Of a DNA stretch of 64,000 nucleotides, positions 158 to 36,300 are shown piece by piece. Numbering within the stretch: the stretch's first letter is position 1; every line of letters begins with the position of its first letter. Location: contig NC_047072.1 of the NCBI RefSeq assembly GCF_902459465.1, positions 10,292,001 through 10,356,000 of the forward strand. The letters run 5' to 3'. Source of the DNA: Asterias rubens. Its lineage: Eukaryota. The position numbers were made by a program, and so were the translations under genes. The notes under the pieces were generated by a model. The model did not search any database, was not told the DNA's origin, and saw only the letters and a list, made by a program, of their open reading frames with translations.

Positions 158-3100
158 CCCAGCTAGTCTGAACTTGATGTGTATCCCAGCTGCTGCATCT
201 AAGATCTTCGCCTCCTTAGGGTTGATACATCTTAGCATCATACTAGGGTCACCACGGCAACGGAAGTTGATGAGGTCGCGGTAGTAACGGTAAACTTGTA
301 TATCCTGTATGCAAAGAATGAATTCAAAGTAGTTAGTTAAAAATTGATGTTTTGGGGGCAGATCTGGTCGTGCTGGTTTTCTAGTTCACCAAAGAATTAT
401 CAAACAATAACACCATACGTAGATAGTCAGGCGAGCGGTCAGGGTAACAAACTCAAGACACCATACGTAGATAGTTAGGCAAGCGGTCAAGGGTAACAAA
501 CTCAAGACACCATACGTAGATAGTCAGGCGAGCGGTCAAGGGTAACAAACTCAAGACACCATGTGTAGATAGTCAGGCGAGCGGTCAAGGGTAACAAACT
601 CAAGTCAGCTGAGTCATCAGAGTGGGGGTTTGAATCCCTGTTGAGACAATTGTGTCATTAGGCAAGGCACACAGTTGCTTGTCATCACCTATCCTCACTA
701 ATCGTTGCAAGCTTACTGCCCATTGATGCAACAACCATCCACTTCTCCTGGGTTGTGTGGCTGGTGCAGGGGTGATTTTGTGTCACCTAGGAGGAAATGA
801 ATTCCTGCAACATGTGCGCCCTTTTAGCTGTTGGTGCATCATGCTCCAAAGGAGACCAGAAGGAACATCTTAGTCTGGCCCCTTATTTTTATAATAAGAA
901 TTGTGCATCTATGCTTGCTACAGTTGCACACAGGGAACATGTCTACCCACAATATGTGTTCTCCATTACCTCTGTATTGACCCCTTGCACGCATGTCATA
1001 CGCGGCGACTGTGCCACGCTCACCATTTTGGTGGTCAATAGGTTTACTTGTAAATGCCGCGTCGCCTAAAATGTGCACTTCACTGAATAACGCACAGATG
1101 ACATTGCCCACCCAGTGGAAGCGGTTAAGAGCACCAAATTCAAACTCTGGTGTTTCTGATTAGCAGAGTGTGGGTTCGAATCCCCAGCCGTGACACTTGT
1201 GTCCTTAAGCAAGACACTTAACCATTGCTTCGTCCTTCAGATGGGACGTGAAGTCGTTGGTCCCATGTGTTGTGTAACGCATGTAAAAGAACCCAGTGCA
1301 CTTTTCGAAAAGAGAAGGGGTCCGCCCCGGTGTTCTTGGCTGTGGCTGCTGTATGCGCCGTAGCACCTGACCCTTATAAGGTGCTAAACAATTGGGTCTC
1401 AAAACTCATACTGCGATAACTTATCTTTCTGAAAGTTTGTATATACTCAGCGCCTTGAGTACCTTGTTTGGTAGATACGTGCGCTATATAAGACTTCAAT
1501 ATTATCATATTATATTATTAATATGGCGCATCCAAGTTAATCGATGATGACCTCAGGTGAATTGGGTCAATAACCCAAACTGAGGCCAGAAGGAACATGC
1601 TTAGTCTGGCCCCTTTTTGTATAATGATAATTCTGCATCCAAGCTTACTATTGCACATTAGGAACATGTCTACTCACAATGTGTGTCCTCCATGCTCTCT
1701 GTACAATCTTGGCAGCCTCCTTGGGGTTCAGGGGATAAGTCCTCTTCTTCTTCTTCCTCCTCTTCGTTGGTTGAACTTTGACCTTTGTCTGGCTGGGCCC
1801 GGTTGAGCTGGAGACTACAACGGACTGGACCCCTTGGTGGGATATGTTGGTGACCATCGTGGAACGCTGTCTTTTGACTCTGTGCCACCAGTTCTGAATG
1901 AAGTGGGCGCAGAATTCTCTAAACCTGTCAGTTTAAAAAGAAGAAAGAATACTTTGATTTTACGTTGACTGCCCTATGCTCAGAGGCCCTTATGTTCTAA
2001 CAAACCTTTGTTCCGAAAATCCCCTCGTGATTTACACGCTATTTCGTCTCTCCATTTTCCTCGATTAATATACAAATTTACAAATCACCAACATTATTTT
2101 CAGTATAAAATTTTTCTGTAAAATTGAAAGTACTTACGATATAACAACCGACTCCCCTTTTGACTTTTTGTAACTGCAGTATTTTTCATAGTAGCCTTCC
2201 AGTCTCTGTCTGGCGCTGGCTGTTTTAACAGCTGAAGCCTTGGACGCAACTGAATCCTTTAAACACGAGGGACAACAATAACAACTTCTTAACAAGAATT
2301 CCTCGTTCTCTTTTAGCTCAAGACAAAAGAAATGCAATCAAGTGTTCAAAAATAATAATAATGTAGAGGCACTACTACAAACAAATGCTCCAGTTTGTAC
2401 AGTAGGGCATATTTTAAACCAAGTTAAAGGAACGCGTTGCCTTGGATCAGTCGAGTTGGTCTTTGAAAAGCGTTTGTAACCGTTTGTTATAAAATGCATA
2501 TGGTTAGAAAGATGTTGTAAAAGAAGAACACAATGATCCACACAAACATGCCTCGAAATTGCACGGTTTTCCTTTTACCTCGTCGACTAACACGGTCGGC
2601 CATTTATGGGAGTCAAATTTTTGACTCCCATAAATGGCAAACCGTGTTTTTCGCAAAGTAAAAGGAAAACCACGCAATTTCGAGGCAAACTTGTGTGGAT
2701 CATTGTATTCTACTTTTAAAACATCTTTCCAAACATATGCATTTTATAACAAACGGTTACAAACGCTTTTTATAGACCAACTCGTCCGATCCAAGACAAC
2801 ATGTTCCTTTAAACACCAAGAAGAAAACATTTCGGAGACCTTGTTCCAATTCTATTAATTTTGGTTTTACCCATATTATATACACTGATGTGTGTTAGGC
2901 TCTGTATGCTCAGTACTTTCCCAAGTTCTGTGAAAAAAAAATCACAGGCATGTTACTTGGGTGGGATTTGAACCCACGACCTTTGCAATTCTAGAGCAGT
3001 GTCATACCAAGTAGACCACCGAGATTGACTGGTATTTAGAGGCAGTTTGAATCCTATTTTAGCAGCGGGTACCGCAACGATTTAATAGATGTTAAATTTG

Positions 3101-12010: not shown

Positions 12011-12408
12011 TTAAAGGTAGTGGACACTATTGGTAATTACTCAAAATAATTATTATCATGAAACCTTACTTGGTAATGAGTAATGGGGAGAGGTTGATAG
12101 TAAACAAAAACATTGTGAGAAACGGCTCCCTCTGGTGTGGCGCAGTTTTCGAGAAATAAGTAATTTCCACGAATTTGATTTCGAGACCTTAAATTTATGA
12201 GAATTTGCGGTCTCGAAATCAAGCATCTGGGCTGAAAGCACACAACTTCGTGTGACCATGGTGTTTTTTCTTTCATTATTATCTCGCAACTCCGATGACC
12301 AATATTGAGCTAAATTTTTCACAGGTTTGTTATTGTATGCATATGTTGAGATACACCAAGTGAGAAGACTTGTCTTTGACAATTACCAATAGTGTCCAGT
12401 GTCTTTAA
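12011..12408. mobile_element. Abundant TTAA-flanked MITE family (Kolobok-like)
   Basis: TIRs TTAA|AGG(C/T)AGTGGACACTATTGGTAATT ... AATTACCAATAGTGTCCA(G/C)TG(T/C)CT|TTAA. Full or partial copies at about 4233-4849, 27984-28349, 29459-29845, 33061-33447, 39700-40237, 41445-42075 and 58611-58800. TTAA plus purine-purine termini is characteristic of Kolobok. Confidence 0.8.
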
Positions 12409-13215
12409 CATGTCAATGTATTATCCGGGATAATTAATCGCTCATAGTACTTTAGTTTTTTTATAAACATTTTGTGTTTGTTTAATAATAAGCCCACCAC
12501 GCCCCAATATTTTAGTTGATGCTGGACAAGCAAGCTTGGCCGCATGCTAGCCCCGACCTTTTTGCTAAGATAATAAATAAATATTAGTCTGGCCCCTGTG
12601 AAATGACGTCAGAAGTTAAGTCTCGTTTTTTGACATGAGGGCGCACTTCCAGATTAACGGTGGTAAAAATATTAAGGAGTTGGTGCCTTCAAAGTTTGTG
12701 CACATGGACAATTTTATTGGCCAAAATTGTGAACACAGAGGATGCTGCCAAAGTTTGTTTGTACCCCATCTAACCAATACTGACAATGTTGTCTTACGAT
12801 GGATTTTGCTTTGTGCATGAAATCGAGCCATGTGGCTTATATCCATTTGTGTCTAGGCAGAAATTCAACGACCCTGTTGTTGTGTCAATGCACGAGATAT
12901 TTGACAGTACATGCAATATTGTGAAGGGGGTAGCTTCAGTGCAAGCTGATGCAAGGGATTGATTCCATCAAATGCTTTAATTTGCAGAAAACTACTCGAA
13001 ACAAAATAATTGTGAAACTTGTTGTACTTGCCATAATCACACATTGACCCTCTGAAAGGTGCTGGACTAAAGAACAAAAATTGAAATAGTTTCATTGACC
13101 CAGATTTATAAGATACTGCCATTGTTTTATTAATTCGAACCCCGGCACGCCAGTTGATCAGTCTCGCGGATGTATTATTAGCCAGGCCCCCACAAACACG
13201 GAATTGAAGAGAGCA

Positions 13216-13716
13216 GAGTTAAAACACTGACCTCCCTCAAAACCCCGTCCAAGAGGGGGCCTAGGGGACCTTCAACCAACCCCCATACTCGCACCCTTGA
13301 TGGGTAACAGCGGTGTGGAAGAATGATTGGTCTTCAGTCCCCCTGGCCAAAGAGACTAGAAGAAGATTGACCCCACGCCACGCCCAGGTCCATCTCATCC
13401 CGCATGCAGGACGGAGAACGAGGAGCAGCGAGAATCAGGAAAAAGTGATGCCGGTGTGCCCTTGATCTGCCCGGGTAGAGTGCGTCCGAGGCAGCCACCG
13501 GCGTCGGACTATACAATCCAGAGTCTATTGAACACTACACGTATTGAAATACGTCGTGCCGCACTGGTTGATGGAATACCCTGGGGGTGCTGGGAAGTCC
13601 GTCTCTGTCGGTGCATTTCTTGGGCCGTCTAGCATGGGCCCCGTGGCTCGGAGGCCCCGGCCCCATGTAGACGGCGACAGCGAGGGCGATGGTTGGTTTC
13701 TCAGTGCTATGAACTC
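13216..13716 (-). ncRNA. Putative structured ncRNA, type A copy 1 (core of 501 nt)
   Basis: GC-rich island downstream of TATATAAG (13760-13753), followed by AATAAA (13131-13126). The 5' GAGTT..CACTGA pairs with the 3' TCAGTG..AACTC, and there are several nested hairpins. Not matched to a known family by eye. Confidence 0.6.
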
Positions 13717-13752
13717 GATGAGACCCACTGACGAACAAGCCGTGTGAGAGCT

Positions 13753-13832
13753 CTTATATAGCCTTACTAGCCCGGGAAAGCAGATGACTCACGCACGTCA
13801 AAGGTCCAACCCGCTGGAGAAAAATCTAGAAT
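13753..13832 (-). promoter_or_regulatory. Pol II-type promoter of type A: TATA, AP-1, CRE half-site, HSE-like element (repeated in copies 2 and 3)
   Basis: TATATAAG 13760-13753, TGACTCA 13785-13791, ACGTCA 13795-13800 (ACATCA in copy 3), and aGAAa-aATCt-aGAAt 13818-13832 (one mismatch to the HSE consensus). Confidence 0.55.
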
Positions 13833-14533
13833 GTCTATGACACGTCAAGTATTAAAGCATGATGAAATAAAAAATTGTCAAAATTGAAACGTTGTTTTGT
13901 TCAATGTTCCAGACGTTTCCATGCTACATTCCAAGCCTACATCACCCCCCCCCCCACACCCACACACACAAAACAATAAATAACGAAAAGCAATGAACCT
14001 TGAAAATCAGGGCTGTGTCCTTCGGTTTTTATTGTCCCATTTTCCAAATTGAAATGAATTTTATTTTCGCATTATTCGAAATTTTGTTATACGTGTAAAA
14101 TTAAGCTTATGATAACAATGGACAGAACGGAAAGGAAATGACACAATCAAAACAACACCAAGCACTTTCAACAGAAAGCGGTAAAGTCATTGATTGGGCC
14201 TAATTTTGGTTTGAGTGTTTTCAGCGCTTCTGCATGAGTCCCCATTACTTATCGTAGTTTTTAGAATGTGCTATGTGCATGAAGAAGAAAACCTGAACAA
14301 AATACATGACGCTTTTAATAATATCTCGCAACTTCGACGACCATGAGCTCAATTTTTCACATGTTTGTTATTTTATGCATATGTTGAGATACACCAAGTG
14401 AGAAGACTGGTCTTTGACAATTACCAATAGTGTCCACTGCCTTTAACACATTTTTTTCGCAGTGAGACTGAGAACAATAAAAAACCAAAGACCCGTGGAT
14501 TTGCTTTTGCCGCGAACCATCAAACCATTTTAA

Positions 14534-14893: not shown

Positions 14894-15824
14894 GTTCAGT
14901 TCAATATAAATTGTACAAACTACTACAAGGTTCATGATTTTGCTCGTGCTGTGAAAATAACGTGGGACATTCCTATAACTTCGGCTTGAATGCAATTTAC
15001 TTAAATTGTGTAATGTTTTTATTTTATTTTAAATGTGACCCATGTGTCACAGTGGGCTCCTCAGAGTTAACTCCAAATTGCACGCTCGGTATGTAAATAC
15101 TTTGATTCGCTAGTATAGGTAAGAAAATCTCCCTTAAAAAATGCATGAATGAGCTTGGAACATAAATTCTTGATAGGCCTTTATATACTTTACAAAACCA
15201 GGCAATAGGCTTATACATCATGTAAACCATGAATGGATGAAAAAGCCTCCCATGGTACGTGTGAACAGAAGCTTGAGTTACAAGTTTCCGGCACACTCAC
15301 GGCTGTTTCCTGTTTCACCAAGGTCAACAGCAGTGTGAATCCATACCATGCGCGACAAACTGACAAAAATGCCAGAGCCTACTAATAATACGCCATGTTG
15401 TCTTACGATGGATTTTGCTTTGTGCATGAAATCGAGCCATGTGGCTTATATCCATTTGTGTCTAGGCAGAAATTCAACGACCCTGTTGTTGTGTCAATGC
15501 ACGAGATATTTGACAGTACATGCAATATTGTGAAGGGGGTAGCTTCAGTGCAAGCTGATGCAAGGGATTGATTCCATCCAATGCTTTAATTTGCAGAATA
15601 CTACTCAAAACAAAATAATTGTGAAACTTGTTGTACTTGCCATAATCACACATTTACCCTCTGAAAGGTGCTGGACTAAAGAACACAAATTGAAATAGTT
15701 TCATTGAACCAGATGTATAAGATACTGCCATTGTTTTATTAATTCGAACCCCGGCATGCCAGTTGATCAGTCTCGCGGATGTATTATTAGCCAGGCCCCC
15801 ACAAACACGGAATTGAAGAGAGCA

Positions 15825-16325
15825 GAGTTAAAACACTGACCTCCCTCCAAACCCCGTCCAAGAGGGGGCCTAGGGGACCTTCAACCAACCCCCATACTCG
15901 CACCCTTGATGGGTAACAGCGGTGTGGAAGAATGATTGGTCTTCAGTCCCCCTGGCCAAAGAGACTAGAAGAAGATTGACCCCACGCCACGACCAGGTCC
16001 ATCTCATCCCGCATGCAGGACGGAGAACGAGGAGCAGCGAGAATCAGGAAAAAGTGATGCCGGTGTGCCCTTGATCTGCCCGGGTAGAGTGCGTCCGAGG
16101 CAGCCACCGGCGTCGGACTATACAATCCAGAGTCTATTGAACACTACACGTATTGAAATACGTCGTGCCGCACTGGTTGATGGAATACCCTGGGGGTGCT
16201 GGGAAGTCCGTCTCTGTCGGTGCATTTCTTGGGCCGTCTAGCATGGGCCCCGTGGCTCGGAGGCCCCGGCCCCATGTAGACGGCGACAGCGAGGGCGATG
16301 GTTGGTTTCTCAGTGCTATGAACTC
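15825..16325 (-). ncRNA. Putative structured ncRNA, type A copy 2
   Basis: Near-identical to copy 1. TATA 16369-16362, AATAAA 15740-15735. Confidence 0.6.
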
Positions 16326-19241
16326 GATGTGACCCACTGACGAACAAGCCGTGTGAGAGCTCTTATATAGCCTTACTAGCCGGCCGGGAAAGCAGATGAC
16401 TCACGCACGTCAAAGGTCCAACCCGCTGGAGAAAAATCTAGAATGTCTATGACACGTCAAGTATTAAAGCATGATGAAATAAAAAAAAAATCAAAATTGA
16501 AACGTTGACGTTCTGAATTTTGGTTTTGTTCAGTGTTCCAGACGTTTCCATGCTACATTCCAAGCCTACATCACACCCCCCCCCCCCCCCCCAACACACA
16601 CAAAACAATAAATAACGAAAAGCAATGAACCTTGAAAATCACTGAGTCATACTGTTTCCAGGGCTGTGTCCTTCGGTTTTTATTGTCCCATTTTCCAAAT
16701 TGAAATGAATGAAAATTTTTATTTTCGCATTATTCGAAATTTTGTTATACGTGTAAAATTAAGCTTATGATAATAATGGAAAGTAAACGGAAAGGAAATG
16801 ACACAATCAAAACAACACCAAGCACTTTCAACAGAAAGCGGTAAAGTCACTGATTAGGCCTAATTTTGGTTTGAGTGTTTTCAGCGCTTCTGCATGGGTC
16901 CCCATTACTTATCGTAGTTTTTAGAATGTGCTATGTGCATGAAGAAGAAAACCTGAACAAAATACATGACGCTTTTAATAATATCTCGCAACTTCGACGA
17001 CCATGAGCTCAAATTTTCACATGTTTGTTATTATTTTTATGCATAATGTTGAGATACACCAAGTGAGAAGACTGGTCTTTGACAATTACCAATAGTGTCC
17101 ACTGCCTTTAACACATTTAATTCGCAGTGAGACTGAAAACAAAGACCCGTGGGTTTGCTTTTGCCGCAAACCATCAAACCATTTTAATTAAAGGGACACA
17201 CCGGCTTCGTTGGGCTATTTAGGCTACAAAATACACTAAAACATGATTCTAAAGGTCTTCCAGGAATGGAGAAGAATAGTTGCTAAAGAAACCATCAATT
17301 TGGCCGTTTTAACGCATTTTCAAAAAAAGAAGGTCACGTGGGTTATCCGAACCACTTTTTTGGTTCGGATAACCCACGTGACCTTCGGAGATAGTTTTAG
17401 TTCCAGCCGTATACAAATAAATTAAAAATATATTACTAAACCAAATTTTCTAATTTTTGGTTACAACAACCATCTATAAAAACATTATTTTTATGATTCT
17501 ACACCCCTAAATTGCGTAAACTGTGAGCCGGTGTGTCCCTTTAAGTTCAGTTCAATATAAATTGTACAAACTACTACAAGGTTCATGATTTTGCTCGTGC
17601 TGTGAAAATAACGTGGGACATTCCTATAACTTCGGCTTGAATGCAATTTACTTAAATTGTTTAATGTTTTTATTTTATTTTAAAAATGTGACCCATGTGT
17701 CACATGGGGGCTCCTCAGAGTTAACTCCAAATTGCACGCTCGGTATGTAAATACTTTGATTTGCTAGTATAGGTAAGAAAATCTCCCTAAAAACAATGCA
17801 TGAATGAGCTTGGAACATAAATTCTCGATAGGACTTTATATACTTGACAAAACCAGGCAATAGGCTTATACATCATGTAAACCATGAATGGATGAAAAAG
17901 CCTCCCATGGTACGTGTGAACAGAAGCTTGAGTTACAAGTTTCCGGCACACTCACGGCTGTTTCCTGTTTCACCAAGGTCAACAGCAGTGTGAAGCCATA
18001 CCATGCGCGACAAACTGACAAAAATGCCAGAGTCGACTAATACGCCATTTCAAAACAGATTATTCGTCAACATTGTACACCAGTGGTGTTTTGTGAGCTG
18101 TTCAGCACGTATTATCCGTATTCGATACCAATTTTCAATTACATTTTCGTCCTTTCGAGGTATTCGGAGTGAGAGTCAACTCCTGCTGCATTACGACGAT
18201 ATTTCATCATGGGGATGCATACTTTGCGAGCAAGATTAACATTCAGATTGTTTCTGTTTCGAGAAAATTCTACCAGATTAAAGGCACGTAAATTTTGTTT
18301 AGTTCATTTTCTGGTTCGAGAAATTCTACAATTTCACAGCACGTCACATTAGTTTGTAAGCGGTGCCGAAACTACAACCCTTTCCTTAAAATAATGCCCT
18401 ATCAAGGGTGCACATTGTTTTGGTAGATGGCACTTTTGGCCAATGAAAACTGTAGTTTCCCTTTGCATTTCTCTTAAAGGAGCTAATTTCCAACGGGTCA
18501 TGTTCAATAAGGTAATCGGACACAAGTTAAAACAAGTAGGCCTACATGCAGGCCAGGTCTGCCGGAGATTATGTTCCCCATTAGGAAAATACTTGGGCTT
18601 TAGGTAAGGAGGATGTTTCAAAAGAGGGCGCTATCAGAAGAAGTTTGTACACAGTTCGCCGTATGGGGGACAGTAAATCAGAAGGCTCAGGGGGGGGGGG
18701 GGGGGGGGGGGGCAAAATCTCATACCCACCACACCGGGCTTTACCCGACTGCCAAAATGGTATCGATCAAAGTTTTGCTGTTATTTCGAGGTAATCTAAC
18801 CAATACTGACAATGTTGTCTTACGATGGATTTTGCTTTGTGCATGAAATCGAGCCATGTGGCTTATATCCATTTGTGTCTAGGCAGAAATTCAACGACCC
18901 TGATGTTGTGTCAATGCACGAGATATTTGACAGTACATGCAATATTGTGAAGGGGGTAGCTTCAGTGCAAGCTGATGCAAGGGATTGATTCCATCCAATG
19001 CTTTAATTTGCAGAATACTACTCAAAACAAAATAATTGTGAAACTTGTTGTACTTGCCATAATCACACATTGACCCTCTGAAAGGTGCTGGACTAAAGAA
19101 CACAAATTGAAATAGTTTCATTGAACCAGATGTATAAGATACTGCCATTGTTTTATTAATTCGAACACCGGCATGCCAGTTGATCAGTCTCGCGGATGTA
19201 TTATTAGCCAGGCCCCCACAAACACGGAATTGAAGAGAGCA

Positions 19242-19742
19242 GAGTTAAAACACTGACCTCCCTCCAAACCCCGTCCAAGAGGGGGCCTAGGGGACCTTCA
19301 ACCAACCCCCATACTCGCACCCTTGATGGGTAACAGCGGTGTGGAAGAATGATTGGTCTTCAGTCCCCCTGGCCAAAGAGACTAGAAGAAGATTGACCCC
19401 ACGCCACGACCAGGTCCATCTCATCCCGCATGCAGGACGGAGAACGAGGAGCAGCGAGAATCAGGAAAAAGTGATGCCGGTGTGCCCTTGATCTGCCCGG
19501 GTAGAGTGCGTCCGAGGCAGCCACCGGCGTCGGACTATACAATCCAGAGTCTATTGAACACTACACGTATTGAAATACGTCGTGCCGCACCGGTTGATGG
19601 AATACCCTGGGGGTGCTGGGAAGTCCGTCTCTGTCGGTGCATTTCTTGGGCCGTCTAGCATGGGCCCCGTGGCTCGGAGGCCCCGGCCCCATGTAGACGG
19701 CGACAGCGAGGGCGATGGTTGGTTTCTCAGTGCTGTGAACTC
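19242..19742 (-). ncRNA. Putative structured ncRNA, type A copy 3
   Basis: Near-identical to copies 1 and 2. TATA 19786-19779, AATAAA 19157-19152. Confidence 0.6.
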
Positions 19743-22700
19743 GATGTGACCCACTGACGAACAAGCCGTGTGAGAGCTCTTATATAGCCTTACTAGCCGG
19801 CCGGGAAAGCATATGACTCACGCACATCAAAGGTCCAACCCGCTGGAGAAAAATCTAGAATGTCTATGACACGTCAAGTATTAAAGCATGATGAAATAAA
19901 AAAAAAAAAAAAATTGAAACGTTGATGTTCTGAATTTTGGTTTTGTTCAATGTTCCAGACGTTTCCATGCTACATTCCAAGCCTACATCACACCCCCCCC
20001 CCCACACACACAAAACAATAAATAACGAAAAGCAATGAACCTTGAAAATCACTGAGTCATACTGTTTCCAGGGCTGTGTCCTTCGGTTTTTATTGTCCCA
20101 TTTTCCAAATTGAAATGAATGAAAAATTTTATTTTCGCATTATTCGAAATTTTGTTATACGTGTAAAATTAAGCTTATGATAATAATGGAAAGTAAACGG
20201 AAAGGAAATGACACAATCAAAACAACACCAAGCACTTTCAACAGAAAGCGGTAAAGTCACTGATTAGGCCTAATTTTGGTTTGAGTGTTTTCAGCGCTTC
20301 TGCATGGGTCCCCATTACTTATCGTAGTTTTTAGAATGTGCTATGTGCATGAAGAAGAAAACCTGAACAAAATACATGATGCTTTTAATAATATCTCGCA
20401 ACTTCGACGACCATGAGCTCAAATTTTCACATGTTTGTTATTTTATGCATATGTTGAGATACACCAAGTGAGAAGACTGGTCTTTGACAATTACCAATAG
20501 TGTCCACTGCCTTTAACACATTTTTTTTCGCAGTGAGACTGAGAACAATAAAAAACCAAAGACCCGTGGATTTGCTTTTGCCGCGAACCATCAAACCATT
20601 TTAATTAAAGGGACACACCGGCTTCGTTGGGCTATTTAGGTTAAACAATACACTAAAACATGGTTCTAAAGGTCTTCCAGGAATGGAGAAGAATAGTTGC
20701 TAAAAGAAACCACCAAATTTGGCCGTTTTAACGCATTTTCAAAAAAAGAAGGTCACGTGGGTTATCCGAACCACTTTTTTGGTTCGGATAACCCACGTGA
20801 CCTTCGGAGATAGTTTTACTTCCAGCCGTATAAAAATAAATTAAAAAAATATTACTAAACCAAATTTTCTAATTTTTGGTTACAACAACCATCTATAAAA
20901 ATTAATATTATTTTTATGATTCTACACCCCTAAATTGCGTAAACTGTGAGCCGGTGTGTCCCTTTAAGTTCAGTTCAATATAAATTGTACAAACTACTAC
21001 AAGGTTCATGATTTTGCTCGTGCTGTGAAAATAACGTGGGACATTCCTATAACTTCGGCTTGAATGCAATTTACTTAAATTGTTTAATGTTTTTATTTTA
21101 TTTTAAAAATGTGACCCATGTGTCACATGGGGGCTCCTCAGAGTTAACTCCAAATTGCACGCTCGGTATGTAAATACTTTGATTCGCTAGTATAGGTAAG
21201 AAAATCTCCCTAAAAAAAATGCATGAATGAGCTTGGAACATAAATTCTTGATAGGCCTTTATATACTTTACAAAACCAGGCAATAGGCCTCCCATGGTGT
21301 GAACAGAAGCTTGAGTTACAAGTTTCCGGCACACTCACGGTTGTTTCCTGTTTCACCAAGGTCAACAGCAGTGTGAATCCATATACTGTACCATGCGCGA
21401 CAAACTGACAAAAATGCCAGAGTCGACTAATACGCCATTTCAAAACCGATTATTCGTCAACATTGTACACCAGTGGTGTTTTGTGAGCGGTTCGGCACGT
21501 ATTATTCGTATTCGATACCAATTTTCAATTACATTTTCGTCCTTTCGAGGTATTCGGAGTGAGAGTCAACTCCTGCTGCATTACGACGATGTTTCATCAT
21601 GGGGATGCATACTTTGCGAGCAAGATTAACATTCAGATTGTTTCTGTTTCGAGAAAATTCTACCAGATTAAAGGCACGTCAATTTTGTTTAGTTCATTTT
21701 CTGGTTCGAGAAAATTATACAATTTCACAGCACGTCACATTAGTTTGTAAGCTGTGCCGAAACTACAACCCTTTCCTTAAAATAATGCCCTATCAAGGGT
21801 GCACATTTTTTTGGTAGATGGCACTTTTGGCAAATGAAAACTGTAGTTTCCTTTTGCATTTCTCTTAAAGGAGCTAATTTCCAACGGGTCATGTTAAATA
21901 AGGTAATCTGACACAAGTTAAAACAAGTAGGCCTACATGCAGGCCAGGTCTGCCGGAGATTATGTTCCCCATTAGGAAAATACTTGGGCTTTAGGTAAGG
22001 AGGATGTTTCAAAAGAGGGCGCTATCAGAAGAAGTTTGTACACAGTTCGCCGTATGGGGGACAGTAAATCAGAAGGCTCAGGGGGGGGGGGGGGGGGGGG
22101 GGCAAAATCTCATACCCACCACACCGGGCTTTACCCGACTGCCAAAATGGTATCGATCAAAGTTTTGCTGTTATTTCTATTCGCTTATATATATAAGCGT
22201 GCAGGGGCCAATTTCATAGAGCTGCTTTAGCAAAGAATTTGTCTAAGCACGAAAACAGCTCGCTTATTCTACACATGTTATTGGCCAAAATTGTATGCTA
22301 TATATATAGCATGAGTCTGATATAGGGGGAGGGCACCAGAATCTCCTGCCACACCGGAGCTGCACCATGTTCTTGGAAAAAAAAAATCGATCCAACCCCA
22401 AACCTGTAGATAATGTAAAACATGCAACAAGAGAAATTGTTACGTTTTACATTGCTATTTTGTTGCTATTATAAAGTTACTGTTGTTTGCTTTTGGTATT
22501 GGAAAGGCAGAGCCGAGACTGGGATCATTCTTAGATGTAATTTTATGACGTGCACGTAGAAGCGTTACTTTCCAAATCAAAGTAAAGATCAATTTCGCAA
22601 TTTTCATGAAAATTAGGAAAATATGTTTCATTATTTTTGTTTTGTTATGAAAATATGCGTATAGTCCAGGACTCGTGTCTGATGTCAGTTTCGTTTTAAA

Positions 22701-22859: not shown

Positions 22860-23147
22860 AGTGCATATATACGTCATGACGCGTCAGCTTATCCTCCTAC
22901 CACAGATAGCTTGCACACTCAGCAATTCCATTGCCAAACGTAGTCTTTGTGCGGGCGTTAAAAAATGACCCACGGTCCTCTAACACTAACAAAACATTCA
23001 TAATACACGACTGACAACACGACGTGAGACTACAAGTACATGACGTCACCCTTTCTGCATAGATACGACATCAAACAATAGACTGTTTACATGCGTAAAA
23101 ATAGACTCGTTACGTGGGTGTTTTTCAGGAGGAGGCGCCTATATAAA
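22860..23147 (+). promoter_or_regulatory. Promoter of type B with TATA box and clustered CRE/bZIP sites
   Basis: TATATAAA 23140-23147, perfect CRE TGACGTCA 23041-23048, ACGTCATGACGCGTCA near 22871-22886, TTACGT near 23110, and CCAAT near 22854. Confidence 0.6.
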
Positions 23148-23162
23148 CCCCTGCCACACTGA

Positions 23163-23510
23163 GCAGAGTTAGGTTTTCTCAGCGGTGCGTTGAAATGCGT
23201 AACAATGGGGACTCCTCACTTCGTCTACATCGCAACCTACATCCCAAGCGACGACGTATGGAAATAATACTTCGCTCCGGGGCTGCTTTTGAGTAGCCCC
23301 ATTGCTCGCCATCTTGATGGCAAACCTTAAGGACAGACTCGGCCCGGGCTCGGCAACCTCCCATAGACGGCCGCGCAGTCACCCTTTAAGGGTGCTAGCG
23401 GTGGGAGGGCGTCGGGGATACCCCGGCCCCACTTGTACAGTCTCTGGTGCGCTTTTGTTGTGCGTTCTGACTTAAGGCGTACTTCATTTAAATATTCGCA
23501 CCGATTCTGT
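23163..23510 (+). ncRNA. Putative structured ncRNA, type B (diverged paralog of type A, core of 348 nt)
   Basis: End pairing GCAGAGT/ATTCTGT and CGGTGCG/CGCACCG. Stems GGGGCT/AGCCCC, GCCAT/ATGGC, CCTTAAG/CTTAAGG, CCTCCCA/TGGGAGG, CACCCT/AGGGTG and GTCGGGG/CCCCGGC. Four motifs are shared with type A. Confidence 0.6.
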
Positions 23511-24189: not shown

Positions 24190-25200
24190 TTATTTCGTCA
24201 GGAACTGCATTACCATGTGTACGCAGACGACACTCAGCTATACATCACGTTTAAATCTTCTCAAGAAAACGCCAATGCATCTATTGCAAGACTTGAGAAA
24301 TGCATCCAAGAGATTCGACGTTGGACACAACAAAACTTCCTGAAGTTAAATGATGATAAGACAGAGTTCCTTCTATTTGGGTCACGTCAACAGTTAACTA
24401 AGGTTTCAGTGCCATACATCTCCATCGGTGATGCTCGGATAGCTCCCTCGCTGAAAGCTCGGAACTTAGGGGTTATTTTTGATTCATCAATGACACTTCA
24501 GCCACACATCAACAACATTGTTCGTTTATCATCATATCACATCAGGAATATAGGTAAGATTCGCAAGTACTTGGACAAAAGTGCCACTGAAAAGGTCATT
24601 CACGCATTTGTTACTTCTCGTCTTGACAACGGCAATGCTCTTCTCTACAGTCTTCCTAACAACCAGATTTCCAGACTTCAACGGCTCCAAAATACTGCTG
24701 CCCGCATTGTGACACTGTCTAGAAAATCGTGTTCTATCACCCCCATTCTGAAACAACTACACTGGCTCCCTATCTCTCAACGAATCATCTTCAAGCTGAT
24801 GCTCATTGTCCACAAAGCTCTTAATGGCAAGGCTCCCCACTATATTTCTGAACTGCTTCAAGTTTACACTCCATCAAGGAATCTTCGATCAAGTTCTATG
24901 CTTCTCCTCATTGAACCCAAGTCTCGACACTCATGGGGTGACAGGTCTTTTTCTTCAGCCGCGCCACGCATCTGGAACTCTCTACCACTTAATCTTCGAT
25001 CTTGTCTTTGTACTGCAAAATTCAAGTCTCTTCTCAAAACTTATCTTATGTCACAGGTTTTCAATGACTAATTTTGTTGTGTCTGTTTTTTCTTTGTGTT
25101 GTGTATTGTTTTTGTTTTGTTTTTGGTTTTACTGCGCCTTGAACACCCAGCAGGGTGGATATGTGCGCATTACAAGTCTTATTATTATTATTATTATTAT
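24190..25200 (+). mobile_element. 5'-truncated L2/CR1-group non-LTR retrotransposon (RT C-terminus plus 3' tail)
   Basis: ORF 24217-25071 has YADDTQLY, KLNDDKTE, RNLGVIFD, LQRLQNTAARIV, LHWLP and RIWNSLP, all typical of L2/CR1-group ORF2. It ends in a (TAT)n tail at 25181-25200. Confidence 0.93.
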
Positions 25201-27322: not shown

Positions 27323-30300
27323 TCAATATGTAAAGAGTTGCTTGAGAGTATCCAGAGTAAGTGCACCAGTCTCTCCTTCCAGGTTGTCTAGGCTGGCACT
27401 AAAAGGGTCAGAAACCATTTGAAAAAAATGTTTATTTTTTATATATTTTTTAAAATTATATTCTTACAGATAAACATTTTTATGGTAATGAAATTTCAGA
27501 AGAAAATATCTGTAATTATTATTTACTTTATCATTTTGAAGGTTGAATATTGGTGATGACATTTAAAGGAGGTAATATTAATTTAAACTTTGGATAAAAA
27601 ACATGCTACACTAATATGGGACAGCAACTAATATTCAAATAAATTTGAATACAAGTATTTCATAGCAAATTAGTTATGAATTAATGACTACAATACAGAG
27701 AAAATTATATCATTTCATCGAAAGAACACAAATAAAAGACCACATCAATTTGTCTTTGTTATTATACAAAGCAGTACATAACTTGTAAACTCAACACAAT
27801 GACATGGGGACTACATTGCATTTGTGTTCCATATCTATTCATAAAGGCACTTGCCCCGATGCCCCTGTTCATTACCTTCGTGCCCCTAGAAATGCTACAC
27901 AAATGGAGGGAAACAATTATTAAACATTTGATCTCATCAAAAACAGCCAAAGCCATTCAACACTGAAACCCAGCCAACCAAAGTTAAAGGCACTGGACAC
28001 TATTGGTAATTACTAAAAATAGTTACGAGCAAAGAAAACCTTACTTGGTAACAAGCAACGGGGAGCTGTAAAACGTTGTGAGAAACAGCTCCCTCTGAGG
28101 TAATGTAGTTTTTGAGAAAGGTGTAACTTCTCACTCAAATGTTAAAAGACTTCAGGTCTTTTTTAGGCATCTGAAAGCACACAAATGTGTGCAACAGTTT
28201 TGTTTTTTCTTTCATTACTCTCTTGCAACTTCGATGATCAATTGCGTCCCAAATTTTCACAGATTTGTTATTTTATGCATTGATACGCTGGGATACACCA
28301 AGTGAGAATGCTGGTCTTTGACAATTACCAAAGGTGTGCAGTGCCTTCAGACTCACAATGATAACCAATAAATATAATGACAGATAAACTGAAGATGAAA
28401 CTATAACAGTCGCAGCATAAAAACATTTCAATAAATTAGAAACGTCTCTCTCCCTCTCTATTGACTTACCTTGTGTGCTTAGCTTGTAGAAACGCATGTA
28501 ACCGTTCCTCTATAGTGTCTCTTACTAGAAAGCGATGAACTACAGTTGGCCTAAACGAATCAATAAAACAAAATACTGGGTGATCAACTTTGATGTTGGT
28601 TTAGTGACAGGTTGCAAACTATATTACACTCGTCAACTATTTAACATGATATATTTACACATAGATTCTTGTCAGTTGATTGGTGGAAAACATATCATAT
28701 GTCAAGCTTTATTTAGGCATGCATTTACTGCCGCGACGCTCCAAACTTCCTTTTGGGCGTCCTATACTGATAAATATAGGACAATTGGGACACTTCACAG
28801 CGAAGCTACATATTTATATGCAGCATTGTTATTAACTTCAATACCGTGGAGTTTCTTAATTGGTCTCAACGTTTCGACTAGCTTGCTCTCACTCACTCAC
28901 TCACCCACTCGGTCACCCACTAGCTTGATTTATAACACACCTGTTGCTTTTTCTGAATTCTGGTTGGATGAACTAATATAGTCTAGTGATGGCGCGATCA
29001 TGTTTTGCGGAAACTCGTTACAGCGCCCTCTTTTGACTTGAACCGTGAACAGCAACTAAAAAACTTCCTTTCTTTTCCAGATTTCTGTTCTTATTTCACA
29101 TTTAAGACCGAGCTGTGTTATAAAACATGTTATGTATAGTAGTCATCCTCAGAAGACTGAAGAGTGTGAGAGATGTGGGCCTATTTATAGGGGTTCAGAG
29201 TTTTCATAAATGTTTGTCTCACCTCGTTTGGCCGATACGATGAACTCTCCCCACAGCTTGTAACTCACTGGCTGGATTGAGAATAGGCTCAACGAGTAGT
29301 ACATGAGTAGCTTCCATGATATTCAGACCCTTGCTTCCGCTGTGTACGGGCATCAGGAGTGCCGTCACACACTCCTCTTGCTTGAAATCCATCAAGTTTT
29401 CCTAGGAAGGAAACAAATTTTCTACACTTGAATTTGCATGTTCACGGCACATCAAATATTAAAGGCAGTGGACACTATTGGTAGTTACTCAAAATAATTA
29501 TTAGCATAAAACCTTTCTTGGTGACGAGTAATGGGGAGAGGTTGATAGTATAAAACATTGTGAGAAACGGCTCCCTATGAAGTGCCATAGTTTTCGAGAA
29601 AGAAGTAATTTTCCATGAATTTGATTTCGAGACCTCAGATTTAGAAATTGAGGTCTCGAAATCAACCATCTAAACGCATACAACTTCATGTGACAAGGTA
29701 GTTTTTTCCTTTCAATATTACCTCGCAAGGTCGAAGACCATTTGAGCTCAAATTTTCACAGGTTGGTTATTTTGTGCATATGTTGAGATACACCAACTGT
29801 GAAGGCTAGTCTTTGACAATTACCAATAGTGTCCACTGCCTTTAATAGAGGGAAATTTGCATGAGAGATTAAGAATATTATTTTCGTTTTTTTTTTACCC
29901 ATATACACCGATGTGTGTTAACACTGTCTACTCAGTACTTTCCTGAGCTCTGTGAACAAAAATCATAGGTATATAACTCGGTTGGGATTCAAACCCACAA
30001 CCTTTGCAATTCTGGAGCAGTGTCTTACTAACTAGACCACCGAGATTGCCTGGCAGCTAGAGGCAGTTCAAATCCTACATGTGTTTACTTTAGCAGCGGG
30101 TACCGCAAAGATTTAACAGATGGAAATTTATTGTAATTATTATACATTTCTGGTAATGAAACCAAGCAGTGTGTGGTATCACCATGTGTGTTTCTACTTG
30201 CCACGTAGATTGTGTTCCTTTTGAAAACTCGTCTTGACCCATTTCACCTGACGTCATCATCAGAAAAATCTTGAATGCGCCATACTGGTGGGCAATTTCA

Positions 30301-33300: not shown

Positions 33301-36300
33301 GGTGTTTTTTCTTTCATTATTATCTCACAACTTTGACAACCAATTGAGCTCAAATTTTCACAGGTTTGTTATTTTATGCATATGTTGAGATACACCAAGA
33401 GAGAAGACTGGTCTTTGACAATTACCAATAGTGTCCACTGTCTTTAATGAAATTATCAAGCCCTATGTTGGCTGTCTCCCTATGCTGTAAATATCTTTGT
33501 TATGGTGTGCCAGTCAGAAGCCATACAACCGTTAACTGCCGTGTAGCCAGGGATCACACCCAAGTTTACCATACAACCAGGGAAGCGGCAGCCATGGATC
33601 ACCTTAAGGGGATGCGACAACAGTTTTTTTTAAAAGGATGTATGGTTTCTGACTGGTACCCCTGAAAAAAGATGTTGACAAAATTGGGAGACTGCCAACA
33701 TAAGGCTAGATAGCTAGAGCGCAGGTCTGCTAATCCGTAGGTCGTTGGTTCAAATCTCCCTTGATTAACTTTTTCTTTTTTTCAGCCCCAAATTATTTAA
33801 AATTTTCCAAGTTAGTTTCCCATGTGGTTTGGTACTTGATAGTTTATATTTAATCAATTTTGGCAACTCACTTCAAAGTTTTGTTAATAAAATGCCTTCT
33901 TCTACATACCTGTTTTCCGAGTTCCCGCACACAGATCGGGCAAGGTTCTGGATTGATGCCACCTGGTAGGTCACTCTGCGCACTAGAGAGGCTTCTCAGG
34001 TAGACCAACTGACCAAGCTTCTTCTTCAACTCACTCTGTGCCAGGACCCTGTCGTTAAGAAGCTTATATCGCTGCTGATCCAACTACAAAAACAATTTTT
34101 AAAAACCAAAGATTTTAGTAGCAGAAGGCGTAGTAGAAACAGTTGAGTTTGTGGCAAGTGCTTTCAGTAGCAGTCTTTTGAAAATGAAACACTTGATGTC
34201 ATCTTAAAAAAAAAAAGGTTCACACCATTTGTATCGATGGAAATAATGTCAAAGGGTTTGGGTACTTTTTGTACGACACAAAACACAATGTCATCAGATT
34301 TACATTAACTTTACATGATTTGAAGATAATGTTTGTAGAAAGCTTAATTCCCTTCAAATATTACTTGCTGAGGTGCTGTAGTTTTTGAAAAAGGAGTAAA
34401 GCAATGTCAAAGAAACATTTTTCGTCTCGGGAGACGAACATTATTTTAGCATGTACAACGTTTTTACGAGACTCTCCTGAAACTATTGCTCTGTGATTTG
34501 CACTTTTTTTCCCTCAAATTATTGACGACTAATGAAGCTGAAACTTCTACAAGTAAATTACATTACATACATCTTTATTCACTGTGAGTAGAAATTCATG
34601 TCATGGTTAAAAATATGATCTACAAAGGCATCAAAACCCTTTAAGGAAGTTGGGTCATTACTTGATTTGGTTCGATGACGTTTGGCTGAGAGGTGACATC
34701 GTCTGGCTCATGAGCTTCTCTCAGGCGTAGACGCATGGTGGCCATCTTTAACTCATCCCAAGCTGCAACTCGCTCAGACAGCATGGTCCAGGTGACACGC
34801 AGACTCTGCAGGGGTAAATTATTGGTGAAAATTTTGCCATTCTCTACTTACTATAGACATTGTATAGTGTTGGTAACCAATGGATGAAAAGATTTAGCTT
34901 TTGAAGCAAAAAAAAAAGGCTTGGTGTCAAGTTTGTGTCAGGCTTGTACGTTATGCTCTGTTTTTGAAAGGGCAATGACACCAAGGCATTTTCTACTTGG
35001 TAAAGGGCACCCTATGAGGAAATTGTACATTTCTATTGTAGCATTTCAAGGGCACCAAGGCAATGACCAGGGGGCATGGAAGCAATCGCTCACATCAAAA
35101 TGAAAATACAAAGACGTCATTTGTGGGATACAATCTGAAGCCCCAATAACATCAACAATTGAGTGATGACATCAAACGGCTTTTACACAATATTACTGAA
35201 ATAATAATAATAACAACCGCATTTCTATAGCGCCTAACACCTCTAATAAAGAGCAGTAGAAGTGCTCAAAATGATCAGTTTTTGCAATAATTTAAGAACC
35301 ATCTAATCTTGTGTGAACTAAATTTCTAATTGGATTGACCACTTGTTGAATGACTGTCAGCAAAGATTATTATTTGCCATTACATTCAAGCTGGCCTTTA
35401 CCTGTTTCAGTGTCCACTCTTTTGTGTTGTGAACCTAAATTGCCCAGCTAAAAAAAGCTACCACCTCTTGCAATGAAATTTCGACAGGTTAGTTTGTTTG
35501 TGTATCTGGGAATAACAATCAGAACAGTCTTTAGAAGAATGTTAATTTTGGTTTTTACCCATACACCGATGTGTGTTAGCACTGTATACTCAGTACTTTC
35601 CCGAGTCCTGTGAAAAAATATCACAGGCATGTTACTCGAAGGGGGATTCGAACCAATGACCCTTGCAGTTCTAGAGCAGTGTCTTACCAACTAGACTACC
35701 GAGATACCCGGTAGCTAGAGGCAGTTCGAATCCTATTTTTCTGGCAGCTGGTGCTGCAACGATATAATAGATGTTAAATTTGCATCAGGGATGTGTTAGC
35801 ACTGTATATAATCTTTAGAAGCTTCTGTGACTGTTTCGTTAGTTTTTTACCTTAAACTCTTTCTTCTGTGTGTCCACCATCTCCACATAATCGTTGCCTT
35901 CCTGCAAGACATCTTCATCAGCGCCGTGATGCTTCAGGAACGCCAGGAGAGATCGAAGGATTCTCTCTGTCTCGCTAGCAGCCCAGGAACCTAGGAGTTT
36001 AGGTCCTGTCACATTGCTATCATCATCCTCTGGATCCGGATCCGCCATGTTGTCCCTTCGTGATGTGGAAAAAATCATTAGAATTTACATTTTTTATTTG
36101 TAAAGGAAACCAAAACAGTGATGAATCAGAGCAGTGCAGACTCTACACTGAGTTCTCTAAAACCCTATCAAGAAACCAGCATCTCAAACACTCTTCAGTC
36201 TTCGCAGCCGGTCCAATGTCATGGCTCTGATAACCATAAGCAAAGTGTCAGCGCTTACGCAAGCAGGGAACTACGCGCTTATGTCAAGTGCTATTAAAAG

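What the first reader, a model, noticed from the sequence alone, without database searches (positions are those of the whole stretch)
13100..13760. Type A: TATA-driven, end-paired RNA of about 500 nt with a likely pseudoknot
Seen on the minus strand: closing helix GAGTT..CACTGA / TCAGTG..AACTC; long hairpin CTGTCG-GCCGTCTA-CATGGG / CCCATG-TAGACGGC-CGACAG; ACGTAT/ATACGT; GCCGGTG/CACCGGC. A perfect 8-bp long-range pair AACCAACC (13698-13691) with GGTTGGTT (13281-13274) crosses the CCCTC/GAGGG helix. There is no long ORF. TATA lies 5' and AATAAA 3'. Inference: an independently transcribed structured ncRNA with no family I can name.
Basis: partly seen in the sequence, partly recalled or inferred. 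Interest (0 to 1): 0.8.

Follow-up and report, generated by a model that had tools for sequence, protein, structure and literature searches.

The report
Conserved sea-star non-coding RNA gene

Summary
The element is real and lies on the minus strand. It occurs three times (13100-13780, 15709-16392, 19126-19809; 98-99% identical) and nowhere else in this 417.6-Mb genome, which is probably a sea star's.

An orthologue from another organism (L039) shows a conserved island covering the promoter and RNA body (about 13140-13930). The body is 94% identical, and the flanks are at random level. The TATA box and the upstream TGAGTCA, TGACGTGT and heat-shock-like sites are kept. AATAAA is not kept.

Indels are not multiples of three and ORF start codons are lost, so it is non-coding. 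One run holds a 437-nt RNA contig with the copy-1 haplotype; two deep RNA-seq runs hold almost nothing, so expression is switched on and off between samples.

Local hairpins are robust. Covariation is not demonstrable with one orthologue.

It matches no Rfam family and is not telomerase RNA, RNase P/MRP or 7SK. It is not an snRNA-type or Pol III gene, and not a transposon.

Best reading: a lineage-restricted Pol II non-coding RNA whose invariant 3' two-hairpin domain (13348-13182) is the functional core. The same scan had also noted a weakly similar "type B" at 23.1-23.5 kb; I found that similarity marginal.

The parts
13765..13930 (-). Promoter region, conserved with the orthologue. It holds TGACGTGT (13847-13840), a heat-shock-element-like TTCtaGATttTTC (13831-13819), TGACGTG (13800-13794; not kept in the orthologue) and an AP-1/MARE-like TGAGTCA (13791-13785).
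   Evidence: Alignments with L039 give 60-90% identity here, against random level beyond 13930. The motifs were read from the sequence. Which factors bind them is inferred, not tested.
13753..13760 (-). TATA box TATATAAG. The start of transcription is inferred about 25-30 nt downstream, near 13733-13728.
   Evidence: Identical in all three copies and in L039. The RNA contig starts at 13700. The start site was not mapped.
13701..13731 (-). 5' local hairpin, UCAGUG...CACUGA.
   Evidence: Present in the single-sequence MFE and in the alignment consensus. The only orthologue change (13714) lies in its loop.
13605..13680 (-). Hairpin H1. The core GCCGUCUA-CAUGGG / CCCAUG-UAGACGGC lies at 13675-13624.
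   Evidence: Pair probabilities are 0.97-1.0, with z -3.4. The orthologue keeps a hairpin here (-45.9 kcal/mol, z -2.4), but in a shifted register: one compensatory pair (U-A to C-G), one A-U to G-U, three pairs broken.
13450..13554 (-). Central part, with the small hairpin ACGUAU/AUACGU (13554-13539) and the hairpin GCCGGUG...CACCGGC (13502-13450).
   Evidence: Pair probabilities are 0.76-0.94 and 0.97-1.0. Taken alone, these hairpins fold no better than shuffles (z -0.9 and -0.7).
13368..13437 (-). Hairpin H2, with a pyrimidine-rich 5' arm, a purine-rich 3' arm and many G-U pairs. A T5 run lies just upstream at 13447-13443.
   Evidence: -33.5 kcal/mol, z -2.6. The orthologue has indels and broken pairs here. 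The RNA contig reads through the T5 run.
13240..13343 (-). Invariant core: 104 nt identical between the window and the orthologue.
   Evidence: Longest identical run. Its size and place match the roughly 105-nt part that small runs of organisms C and E and of 'starfish metagenome' hold.
13258..13348 (-). Long hairpin hp-X of about 33 bp, with a symmetric GAA/GAA internal loop. Its base overlaps the base of H3, so the two bases exclude each other.
   Evidence: -47.1 kcal/mol, z -3.7 in the window; -44 kcal/mol, z -3.5 in L039. It is part of the alignment consensus.
13182..13264 (-). Hairpin H3 of about 35 bp, the size of a microRNA precursor. It is the last strongly conserved element of the RNA.
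   Evidence: -44.1 kcal/mol, z -3.9 in the window; -48.4 kcal/mol, z -6.4 in L039. Both stem substitutions keep pairing (G-U to G-C, G-C to G-U), and the loop has a 2-nt deletion. The Rfam mir-2012 match (19.6 bits against a gathering score of 90) is a match of shape only.
13126..13131 (-). AATAAA. The orthologue does not conserve it, and it is probably not the defining 3' signal.
   Evidence: L039 reads AGACAA(A) at this place, and identity falls to random level below about 13122. The X1 RNA contig stops at 13264.
15709..16392 (-). Copy 2 of the gene, 99% identical.
19126..19809 (-). Copy 3 of the gene, 98% identical.
   Evidence: The reads were laid on this copy.

Best explanation
The finding is copy 1 of a tandemly triplicated, lineage-restricted gene for an unspliced non-coding RNA of about 0.5-0.6 kb. 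The host is probably a sea star.

Shown:
- The promoter and RNA body are kept as an island in a second organism, while the flanking DNA is not alignable.
- The RNA exists in at least one run and is nearly absent from two deep RNA-seq runs.
- No reading frame is conserved.
- A 104-nt stretch is invariant.

Inferred:
- RNA polymerase II transcribes it from an mRNA-type TATA promoter. The conserved CRE-like, AP-1/MARE-like and heat-shock-element-like sites make it an on/off gene, possibly stress- or tissue-induced.
- The RNA ends near 13145-13185, at or just after hairpin H3, rather than at the unconserved AATAAA.
- The RNA acts as RNA. Its 3' domain of two long hairpins (13348-13182) is the working part, most likely a platform that binds a protein or another RNA. 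The less strictly conserved 5' 380 nt fold into a chain of local hairpins.
For: - Copies: three at 98-99% identity and none elsewhere in the genome, inside a 2.6-3.4-kb tandem unit. The core 13218-13667 has 3 variable columns in 450, against about 70 in 2100 for the rest of the unit.
- Orthologue L039: the body 13173-13764 has 549 identical positions, 35 mismatches and 16 gap columns; the flanks are at random level. The TATA box and three upstream motifs are kept.
- Invariant run of 104 nt at 13343-13240.
- Non-coding: the indels are of 1, 2 and 3 nt, mostly not multiples of three. The ATGs of the 43-aa and 36-aa ORFs are lost and the 35-aa ORF is truncated. There are no protein homologues, no Pfam match and no exact record.
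- Transcription: in run X1 (57 million letters) a 437-nt contig at depth 12 with the copy-1 alleles covers 13264-13700, and the flanks have zero depth. In X23 the few reads have the first mate on +, which fits an RNA on the minus strand.
- Hairpins hp-X and H3 are stable in both organisms, with z -3.5 to -6.4.
Against: - No covariation. There is only one double compensatory change. On the structure predicted from copy 1 alone, 6 changed pairs are kept and 11 are broken, and changes are not significantly depleted in stems (odds ratio 0.55, p 0.09). The stronger depletion seen on the alignment consensus (p 0.0003) is circular.
- The ends of the RNA are not mapped. Contigs cannot show them.
- Two deep RNA-seq runs show essentially no expression, so abundance and inducibility are inferred from coded, unnamed samples.
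- Gene conversion could explain the low divergence among the three copies. It cannot explain the conservation between organisms.
- The function is entirely inferred.
Confidence: 0.7

Rival explanations
1. It is a primary microRNA or small-RNA precursor. The adjacent hairpins hp-X (13348-13258) and H3 (13264-13182) are cut out, and the 5' remainder is a by-product.
For: - H3 has about 35 bp, -44 to -48 kcal/mol and z -3.9 to -6.4.
- Its 5' arm is invariant, both 3'-arm changes keep pairing, and the loop carries the indel. That is the usual pattern for a microRNA precursor.
- The X1 contig ends at 13264, the base of H3.
- Both hairpins lie in the best-conserved part of the gene.
Against: - The 5' 380 nt are also 90-94% conserved while the flanks are unalignable. 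That is unusual for the flanks of a microRNA precursor.
- There is no sequence match to any Rfam microRNA family; mir-2012 scores 19.6 bits against a gathering score of 90.
- Runs X16, X17 and X20 hold words that reach into H3, so unprocessed RNA accumulates.
- No small-RNA data could be examined.
Confidence: 0.18
2. It is an mRNA for a micropeptide, most plausibly the 45-aa ORF at 13398-13264. That ORF is kept as 44 aa in the orthologue.
For: - The ORF is open in both organisms. A -2 and a -1 indel restore the frame, and one AGG to CGG change is synonymous.
- The promoter is of the mRNA type.
Against: - Four AUGs lie upstream of it. The first-AUG ORF (43 aa) loses its start codon in the orthologue.
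- Its last 27 codons and its stop lie inside the 104-nt invariant run, which has no synonymous change and continues about 20 nt past the stop. That pattern points to constraint on the RNA.
- The N-terminal eight residues are scrambled by the frameshift, and a V to D change breaks the only hydrophobic stretch.
- The language-model recognition score of 1554 is below the level of known families. The exact sequence is not on record.
Confidence: 0.06
3. One reading: an RNA of about 500 nt closed by GAGTT..CACTGA/TCAGTG..AACTC, with a pseudoknot AACCAACC/GGTTGGTT across CCCTC/GAGGG.
For: The complementary words exist. AACCAACC and GGTTGGTT are both unchanged in the orthologue, and forcing that pairing costs only 2.3 kcal/mol.
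Against: - The closing helix has probability 0.000 and costs 8.4 kcal/mol to force.
- The orthologue changes G13714 and C13218, partners in that helix, to U and U.
- An 8-bp perfect complement is expected by chance: 2.4 per shuffle.
- Each strand of these helices has a better local partner.
Confidence: 0.03
4. It is a non-functional relic: a transposon, LTR or viral fragment, or a promoter firing into junk DNA.
For: - The neighbourhood is rich in repeats: a SINE-like 135-bp repeat and a reverse-transcriptase fragment at 24217-25071.
- TATA followed by AATAAA resembles an LTR.
Against: - There are only three copies, all in one tandem array, with no extra terminal copy.
- The unit has no ORF with a viral or transposon domain.
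- The island conserved between organisms has edges that coincide with the promoter and the RNA.
Confidence: 0.03

Closest known systems
Inducible RNA polymerase II long non-coding RNAs, such as Drosophila hsr-omega or mammalian stress-induced lncRNAs
   Same: An mRNA-type promoter (TATA plus AP-1/CRE/heat-shock-like sites), no conserved ORF, strong on/off expression between samples, and an RNA body conserved as RNA.
   Different: There is no sequence relation. This RNA is much shorter, unspliced and tandemly triplicated. Its inducibility is inferred from motifs and from coded samples, not tested.
Primary microRNA transcripts / microRNA clusters
   Same: A Pol II unit with two adjacent 33-35-bp hairpins in which the arms are better conserved than the loop.
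   Different: The non-hairpin part is also conserved. No small RNAs were shown, and there is no match to known microRNA families.
Echinoderm telomerase RNA (427-563 nt, Pol II, pseudoknot, H/ACA domain; PMC4712671, PMC8480181)
   Different: There is no template: no stretch of 6 or more nt of the CCCTAA repeat occurs in type A. No ACA end motif is evident by eye. There are three copies. Starfish telomerase RNAs with the conserved pseudoknot and box H/ACA domains are already described (PMC8480181).
snRNA-type and Pol III type-3 small RNA genes of this same genome (U1, U2, U3, RNase P, MRP)
   Same: Tandem arrays of small RNA genes are usual in this genome (U1 and U3 arrays). RNase P and MRP also have a TATA box.
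   Different: This genome's proximal element (ACMAYCRTRG at about -55 to -65) and its 3' box (CAAAARTAGA) are absent from type A. An internal T5 run is read through.

Membership tests
Any Rfam 15 family | Covariance-model score at or above the gathering score | tested here: not met
   There is no match at gathering level in the window apart from two tRNA-like hits elsewhere. At E up to 10, the only match is mir-2012 at 19.6 bits against 90.
Telomerase RNA | A template of about 1.5 telomere repeats (CCCUAA permutation of 8 nt or more) | tested here: not met
   Neither strand of type A holds 6 or more nt of the repeat. The vertebrate model finds nothing in the genome. Starfish telomerase RNAs with conserved domains are published.
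Telomerase RNA | A 3' H/ACA domain with ACA three nt from the end | tested here: inconclusive
   No hairpin-ANANNA-hairpin-ACA arrangement is seen by eye in 13365-13182. The 3' end is not mapped.
RNase P / RNase MRP / 7SK | Being the genome's copy of that RNA | tested here: not met
   MRP lies on C1 (131.7 bits) and RNase P on C19 (132.9 bits). A full-length 7SK candidate lies on C1 (32.5 bits, just under the cut-off).
snRNA-type Pol II gene | Proximal sequence element at about -55 to -65, and a 3' box | tested here: not met
   The consensus ACMAYCRTRG was derived from 11 snRNA, RNase P and MRP genes of this genome. The best type A site, ACGTGCGTGA, matches 7 of 10 but lacks the invariant A at position 4 and the C at position 5. 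No CAAAARTAGA box follows the RNA.
Pol III type-3 gene | Termination at the first run of four or more T | tested here: not met
   T5 lies at 13447-13443, and the 437-nt RNA contig spans 13700-13264 across it.
Primary microRNA | A hairpin of about 33 bp or more, better than shuffles | tested here: met
   H3 and hp-X.
Primary microRNA | Defined 20-24-nt products from the hairpin arms | not testable with these tools
Protein-coding mRNA | An ORF conserved between organisms, with indels in threes and synonymous bias | tested here: not met
   The indels are of 1, 2 and 3 nt. Two ORF starts are lost and one ORF is truncated. The only retained ORF lies in a stretch with no synonymous change at all.
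Transposon (MITE or LTR) | Dispersed copies | tested here: not met
   Three copies in one array, none elsewhere.
Structured RNA with a conserved fold | Compensatory changes supporting the helices | tested here: inconclusive
   One double change in 173 consensus pairs, and a covariation term of +0.94. 6 changed pairs are kept and 11 broken on the copy-1 structure. With one orthologue, the test has little power.

The most novel reading that the evidence does not exclude
Type A is the founding member of an asteroid-specific family of abundant, non-polyadenylated structured RNAs. Its invariant 104-nt two-hairpin core would be the binding platform of an unknown ribonucleoprotein. Type B (23135-23475, + strand) would be an old, diverged paralogue that keeps only that core and the TATA/CRE promoter. 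Two things would fit this: the core is present in very small libraries of several organisms, and the gene has no conserved poly(A) signal.
Probability: 0.18. Interest if true: 0.65.

Novelty: new member of a known kind. Interest (0 to 1): 0.45.

Why it matters
Few echinoderm non-coding RNA genes are defined by more than a transcript model. This one has four things that make it a clean candidate for functional work: its own conserved promoter, a body conserved between organisms, an invariant 104-nt core, and on/off expression. Reporter assays, knock-down and pull-down of the core are all feasible. It could also serve as a test case for how lineage-specific structured RNAs arise by local duplication. 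If the promoter motifs mean what they suggest, it may be a marker of stress or tissue state in sea stars.

Tried and rejected
- Telomerase RNA: no template, and starfish telomerase RNAs are already described.
- RNase P, MRP and 7SK: found elsewhere in the genome.
- snRNA-type promoter: a shared CGTGAGT 7-mer with the MRP and one U2 proximal element looked promising, but the site fails the invariant positions, and no 3' box follows the RNA.
- Pol III: the internal T5 run is read through.
- tRNA-like 3' processing: ARAGORN found nothing.
- Selenoprotein or read-through frames: nothing convincing, and no SECIS match.
- Densovirus or other viral relic, LTR, MITE: no ORFs or domains in the unit and no dispersed copies.
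- Protein route to orthologues: three ORF frames found no candidates. A fourth gave only low-complexity hits. Exact look-ups were empty. The Atlas gave no usable hit.
- Type A and type B as one family: the local alignment was reached by 2 of 200 shuffles, and the global alignment has z 2.2 with 10 of 300 shuffles reaching it. That is marginal. A motif taken from both types is exact only at these four loci, which is not independent evidence.
- Two of the three metagenome hits (L038, L040) are chance 20-22-mers in unrelated contigs.
- The viral-contig scan was empty.
- Literature searches for the orthologue's accession prefix and for Asterias lncRNAs found nothing relevant.

Full report
**What is there**

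The region read on the minus strand shows TATATAAG at 13760-13753. A G+C-rich body (57% against about 40% around it) follows, and AATAAA lies at 13131-13126. No ATG ORF is longer than 45 aa.

The genome has 417.6 Mb in 150 contigs. Runs labelled "starfish metagenome" hold parts of the element, so the host is probably a sea star.

**Copies**

The element occurs three times, at 13100-13780, 15709-16392 and 19126-19809, at 98-99% identity. It occurs nowhere else in the genome. The copies sit in a tandem unit of 2.6-3.4 kb.

Within that unit, the stretch 13218-13667 has 3 variable columns in 450. The rest of the unit has about 70 in 2100. Tandem arrays of small RNA genes are common in this genome (U1 and U3 arrays).

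**Known families**

- Rfam finds nothing at gathering level. At E up to 10 it gives only a shape-level match of hairpin 13263-13183 to mir-2012, at 19.6 bits against a gathering score of 90.
- RNase MRP, RNase P and a near-threshold 7SK lie on other chromosomes.
- Telomerase RNA would fit the size and the promoter type. But no telomere template is present, and starfish telomerase RNAs with the conserved pseudoknot and box H/ACA domains are already published (PMC4712671, PMC8480181).
- I derived this genome's own proximal sequence element (ACMAYCRTRG at about -55 to -65) and 3' box (CAAAARTAGA) from its U1, U2, U3, RNase P and MRP genes. Type A has neither. Its promoter is therefore of the mRNA type.
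- An internal T5 run (13447-13443) is read through by the RNA contig, which argues against Pol III.

**Transcription**

I laid reads on copy 3 and its surroundings.

- Run X1 has only 57 million letters, yet it contains a 20-kb contig, and its depth on this stretch is patchy. It is therefore RNA-like. It holds a 437-nt contig at depth 12 that lies wholly inside the element, at copy-1 coordinates 13264-13700. The contig carries the copy-1 alleles at both diagnostic sites, and the flanks have zero depth.
- Two deep RNA-seq runs of another organism label (X22, X23; about 1.7-1.9 thousand million letters read from each) hold almost nothing. The few X23 reads have the first mate on +, as expected for an RNA on the minus strand.
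- Expression is therefore strongly dependent on the sample. Contigs cannot show the ends of the RNA.
- When I searched only 13178-13365, shares rose to 0.25-0.50 for small runs of organisms C, D and E and of "starfish metagenome". The same runs had held 5-13% of the words of the whole element. What they hold is thus a part of about 105 nt in that stretch.
- Runs X16, X17 and X20 hold words that reach further into hairpin H3.

**An orthologue**

A 20-mer from that stretch fetched three metagenome-collection records. Two are chance matches. The third, L039 (1460 nt), aligns over 13134-13764 at 91% identity.

- In a global alignment the body 13173-13764 has 549 identical positions, 35 mismatches and 16 gap columns (94%). 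The promoter 13765-13926 is 60-90% identical. DNA beyond 13930 and below 13122 is at random level. The edges of the conserved island coincide with the promoter and the RNA.
- Kept in L039: the TATA box, TGAGTCA (13791-13785), TGACGTGT (13847-13840) and TTCtaGATttTTC (13831-13819).
- Not kept: AATAAA, and the second TGACGTG (13800-13794).
- The longest identical run is 104 nt, at 13343-13240. This matches the part that the small runs hold.

**Coding or not**

- The indels between the two organisms are of 1, 2 and 3 nt, mostly not multiples of three.
- The ATG of the first-AUG ORF (43 aa) becomes CTG. The ATG of a 36-aa ORF becomes GTG. A 35-aa ORF is cut to 21 aa.
- The 45-aa ORF at 13398-13264 survives only through a -2 and a -1 indel. 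Its N-terminus is scrambled and its hydrophobic stretch is interrupted. Its last 27 codons and its stop lie in the invariant run, which has no synonymous change and continues past the stop.
- No homologue, family or record exists for any frame.
- The gene is best read as non-coding.

**Structure**

For a 552-nt RNA spanning 13733-13182:

- CCCTC/GAGGG has probability 0.000.
- The 8-bp AACCAACC/GGTTGGTT pairing has probability 0.012.
- Perfect 8-bp complements are expected by chance: 2 are seen, and shuffles give 2.4.

The local hairpins do hold up:

- H1 core, probability 0.97-1.0.
- GCCGGUG/CACCGGC, 0.97-1.0.
- ACGUAU/AUACGU, 0.76-0.94.
- The long hairpins hp-X (13348-13258) and H3 (13264-13182), with z -3.5 to -6.4 in both organisms.

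A different closing helix, 13692-13680 with 13193-13182, is predicted at probability 0.7-0.8.

Evidence from substitutions is weak:

- There is one double compensatory change in 173 consensus pairs.
- On the structure predicted from copy 1 alone, 6 changed pairs are kept and 11 are broken. Changes are not significantly depleted in stems (odds ratio 0.55, p 0.09).
- The stronger depletion on the alignment consensus (p 0.0003) is circular, because that structure was fitted to the same alignment.
- In H3, both stem changes keep pairing and the loop carries the indel.
- H1 is kept as a hairpin in a shifted register.

**Reading**

This is a conserved, lineage-restricted non-coding RNA gene with an mRNA-type TATA promoter. 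Pol II transcription is inferred. It is switched on in some samples and off in others. Its invariant 3' two-hairpin domain is the likely working part.

Whether that domain binds a partner or is cut into small RNAs cannot be decided here. I favour the first, because the 5' 380 nt are conserved too. The 3' end probably lies at or shortly after H3 (about 13145-13185), because conservation stops there and AATAAA is not kept. This is inferred.

**Type B**

Read on the + strand, it has its own TATATAAA and a perfect TGACGTCA upstream. Its best similarity to type A falls inside type A's invariant core.

The similarity is only marginal against shuffles. No RNA run that I laid covers type B.

Noticed in passing
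window 23135-23475 (+ strand): 'Type B' is more plausibly read on the + strand. It has TATATAAA at 23140-23147, with a perfect CRE (TGACGTCA) roughly 65 nt upstream of it, and a T4 run at 23453-23456. Its best similarity to type A (67 nt, 67% identity, E 0.007) lies inside type A's invariant core. Depth is zero in the three RNA-like runs laid. In organism F the region differs by about 0.5%.
   Followed up: partly
window 12270-12410, 14312-14446, 16972-17111, 20382-20516, 29709-29845, 33311-33447, 41576-41712 and others: A SINE-like repeat of about 135 bp is scattered through the window, once per tandem unit. It has very high depth in RNA-seq (thousands of reads, with many different flanking sequences).
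   Followed up: no
window 24205-25071 (+ strand): An ORF of 284 aa has a partial reverse-transcriptase domain (RVT_1, E 9e-6). It is transcribed in all the runs, and reads carry unmatched sequence immediately upstream of 24205. It is probably a 5'-truncated retroelement.
   Followed up: partly
L020-L037, L004, L005 (other chromosomes of the same genome): snRNA genes of this genome form tandem arrays: U1 on C21 spaced mostly about 1.1-1.2 kb, and U3 on C11 spaced mostly about 0.93 kb. They share a proximal element, ACMAYCRTRG, at about -55 to -65. Only RNase P and MRP add a TATA-like box about 30 nt downstream of it. U1, U2 and U3 are followed by a CAAAARTAGA-like 3' box.
   Followed up: partly
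L019 (G000:C1:10331754-10332010, - strand): A full-length 7SK candidate scores 32.5 bits, just under Rfam's cut-off of 35, and is followed by T runs. It is probably this genome's 7SK gene.
   Followed up: no
window 19227-19380 (= copy-1 coordinates 13201-13354): In run X15 (organism F, DNA-like coverage) a variant of this part, with 3 substitutions and 3 deleted letters at two places, has depth 268 against about 31 in the flanks. That organism may carry more, slightly different copies of the core.
   Followed up: no
window 2953-3025 and 29974-30046 (- strand): Two tRNA matches score low (38 and 37 bits). The second lies next to a copy of the SINE-like repeat. They may be tRNA-derived repeat heads rather than tRNA genes.
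   Followed up: no
window 13940-13980: A (TG)n/(G)n microsatellite lies about 200 nt upstream of the TATA box, at the edge of the conserved promoter island. Its length varies between the three copies.
   Followed up: no
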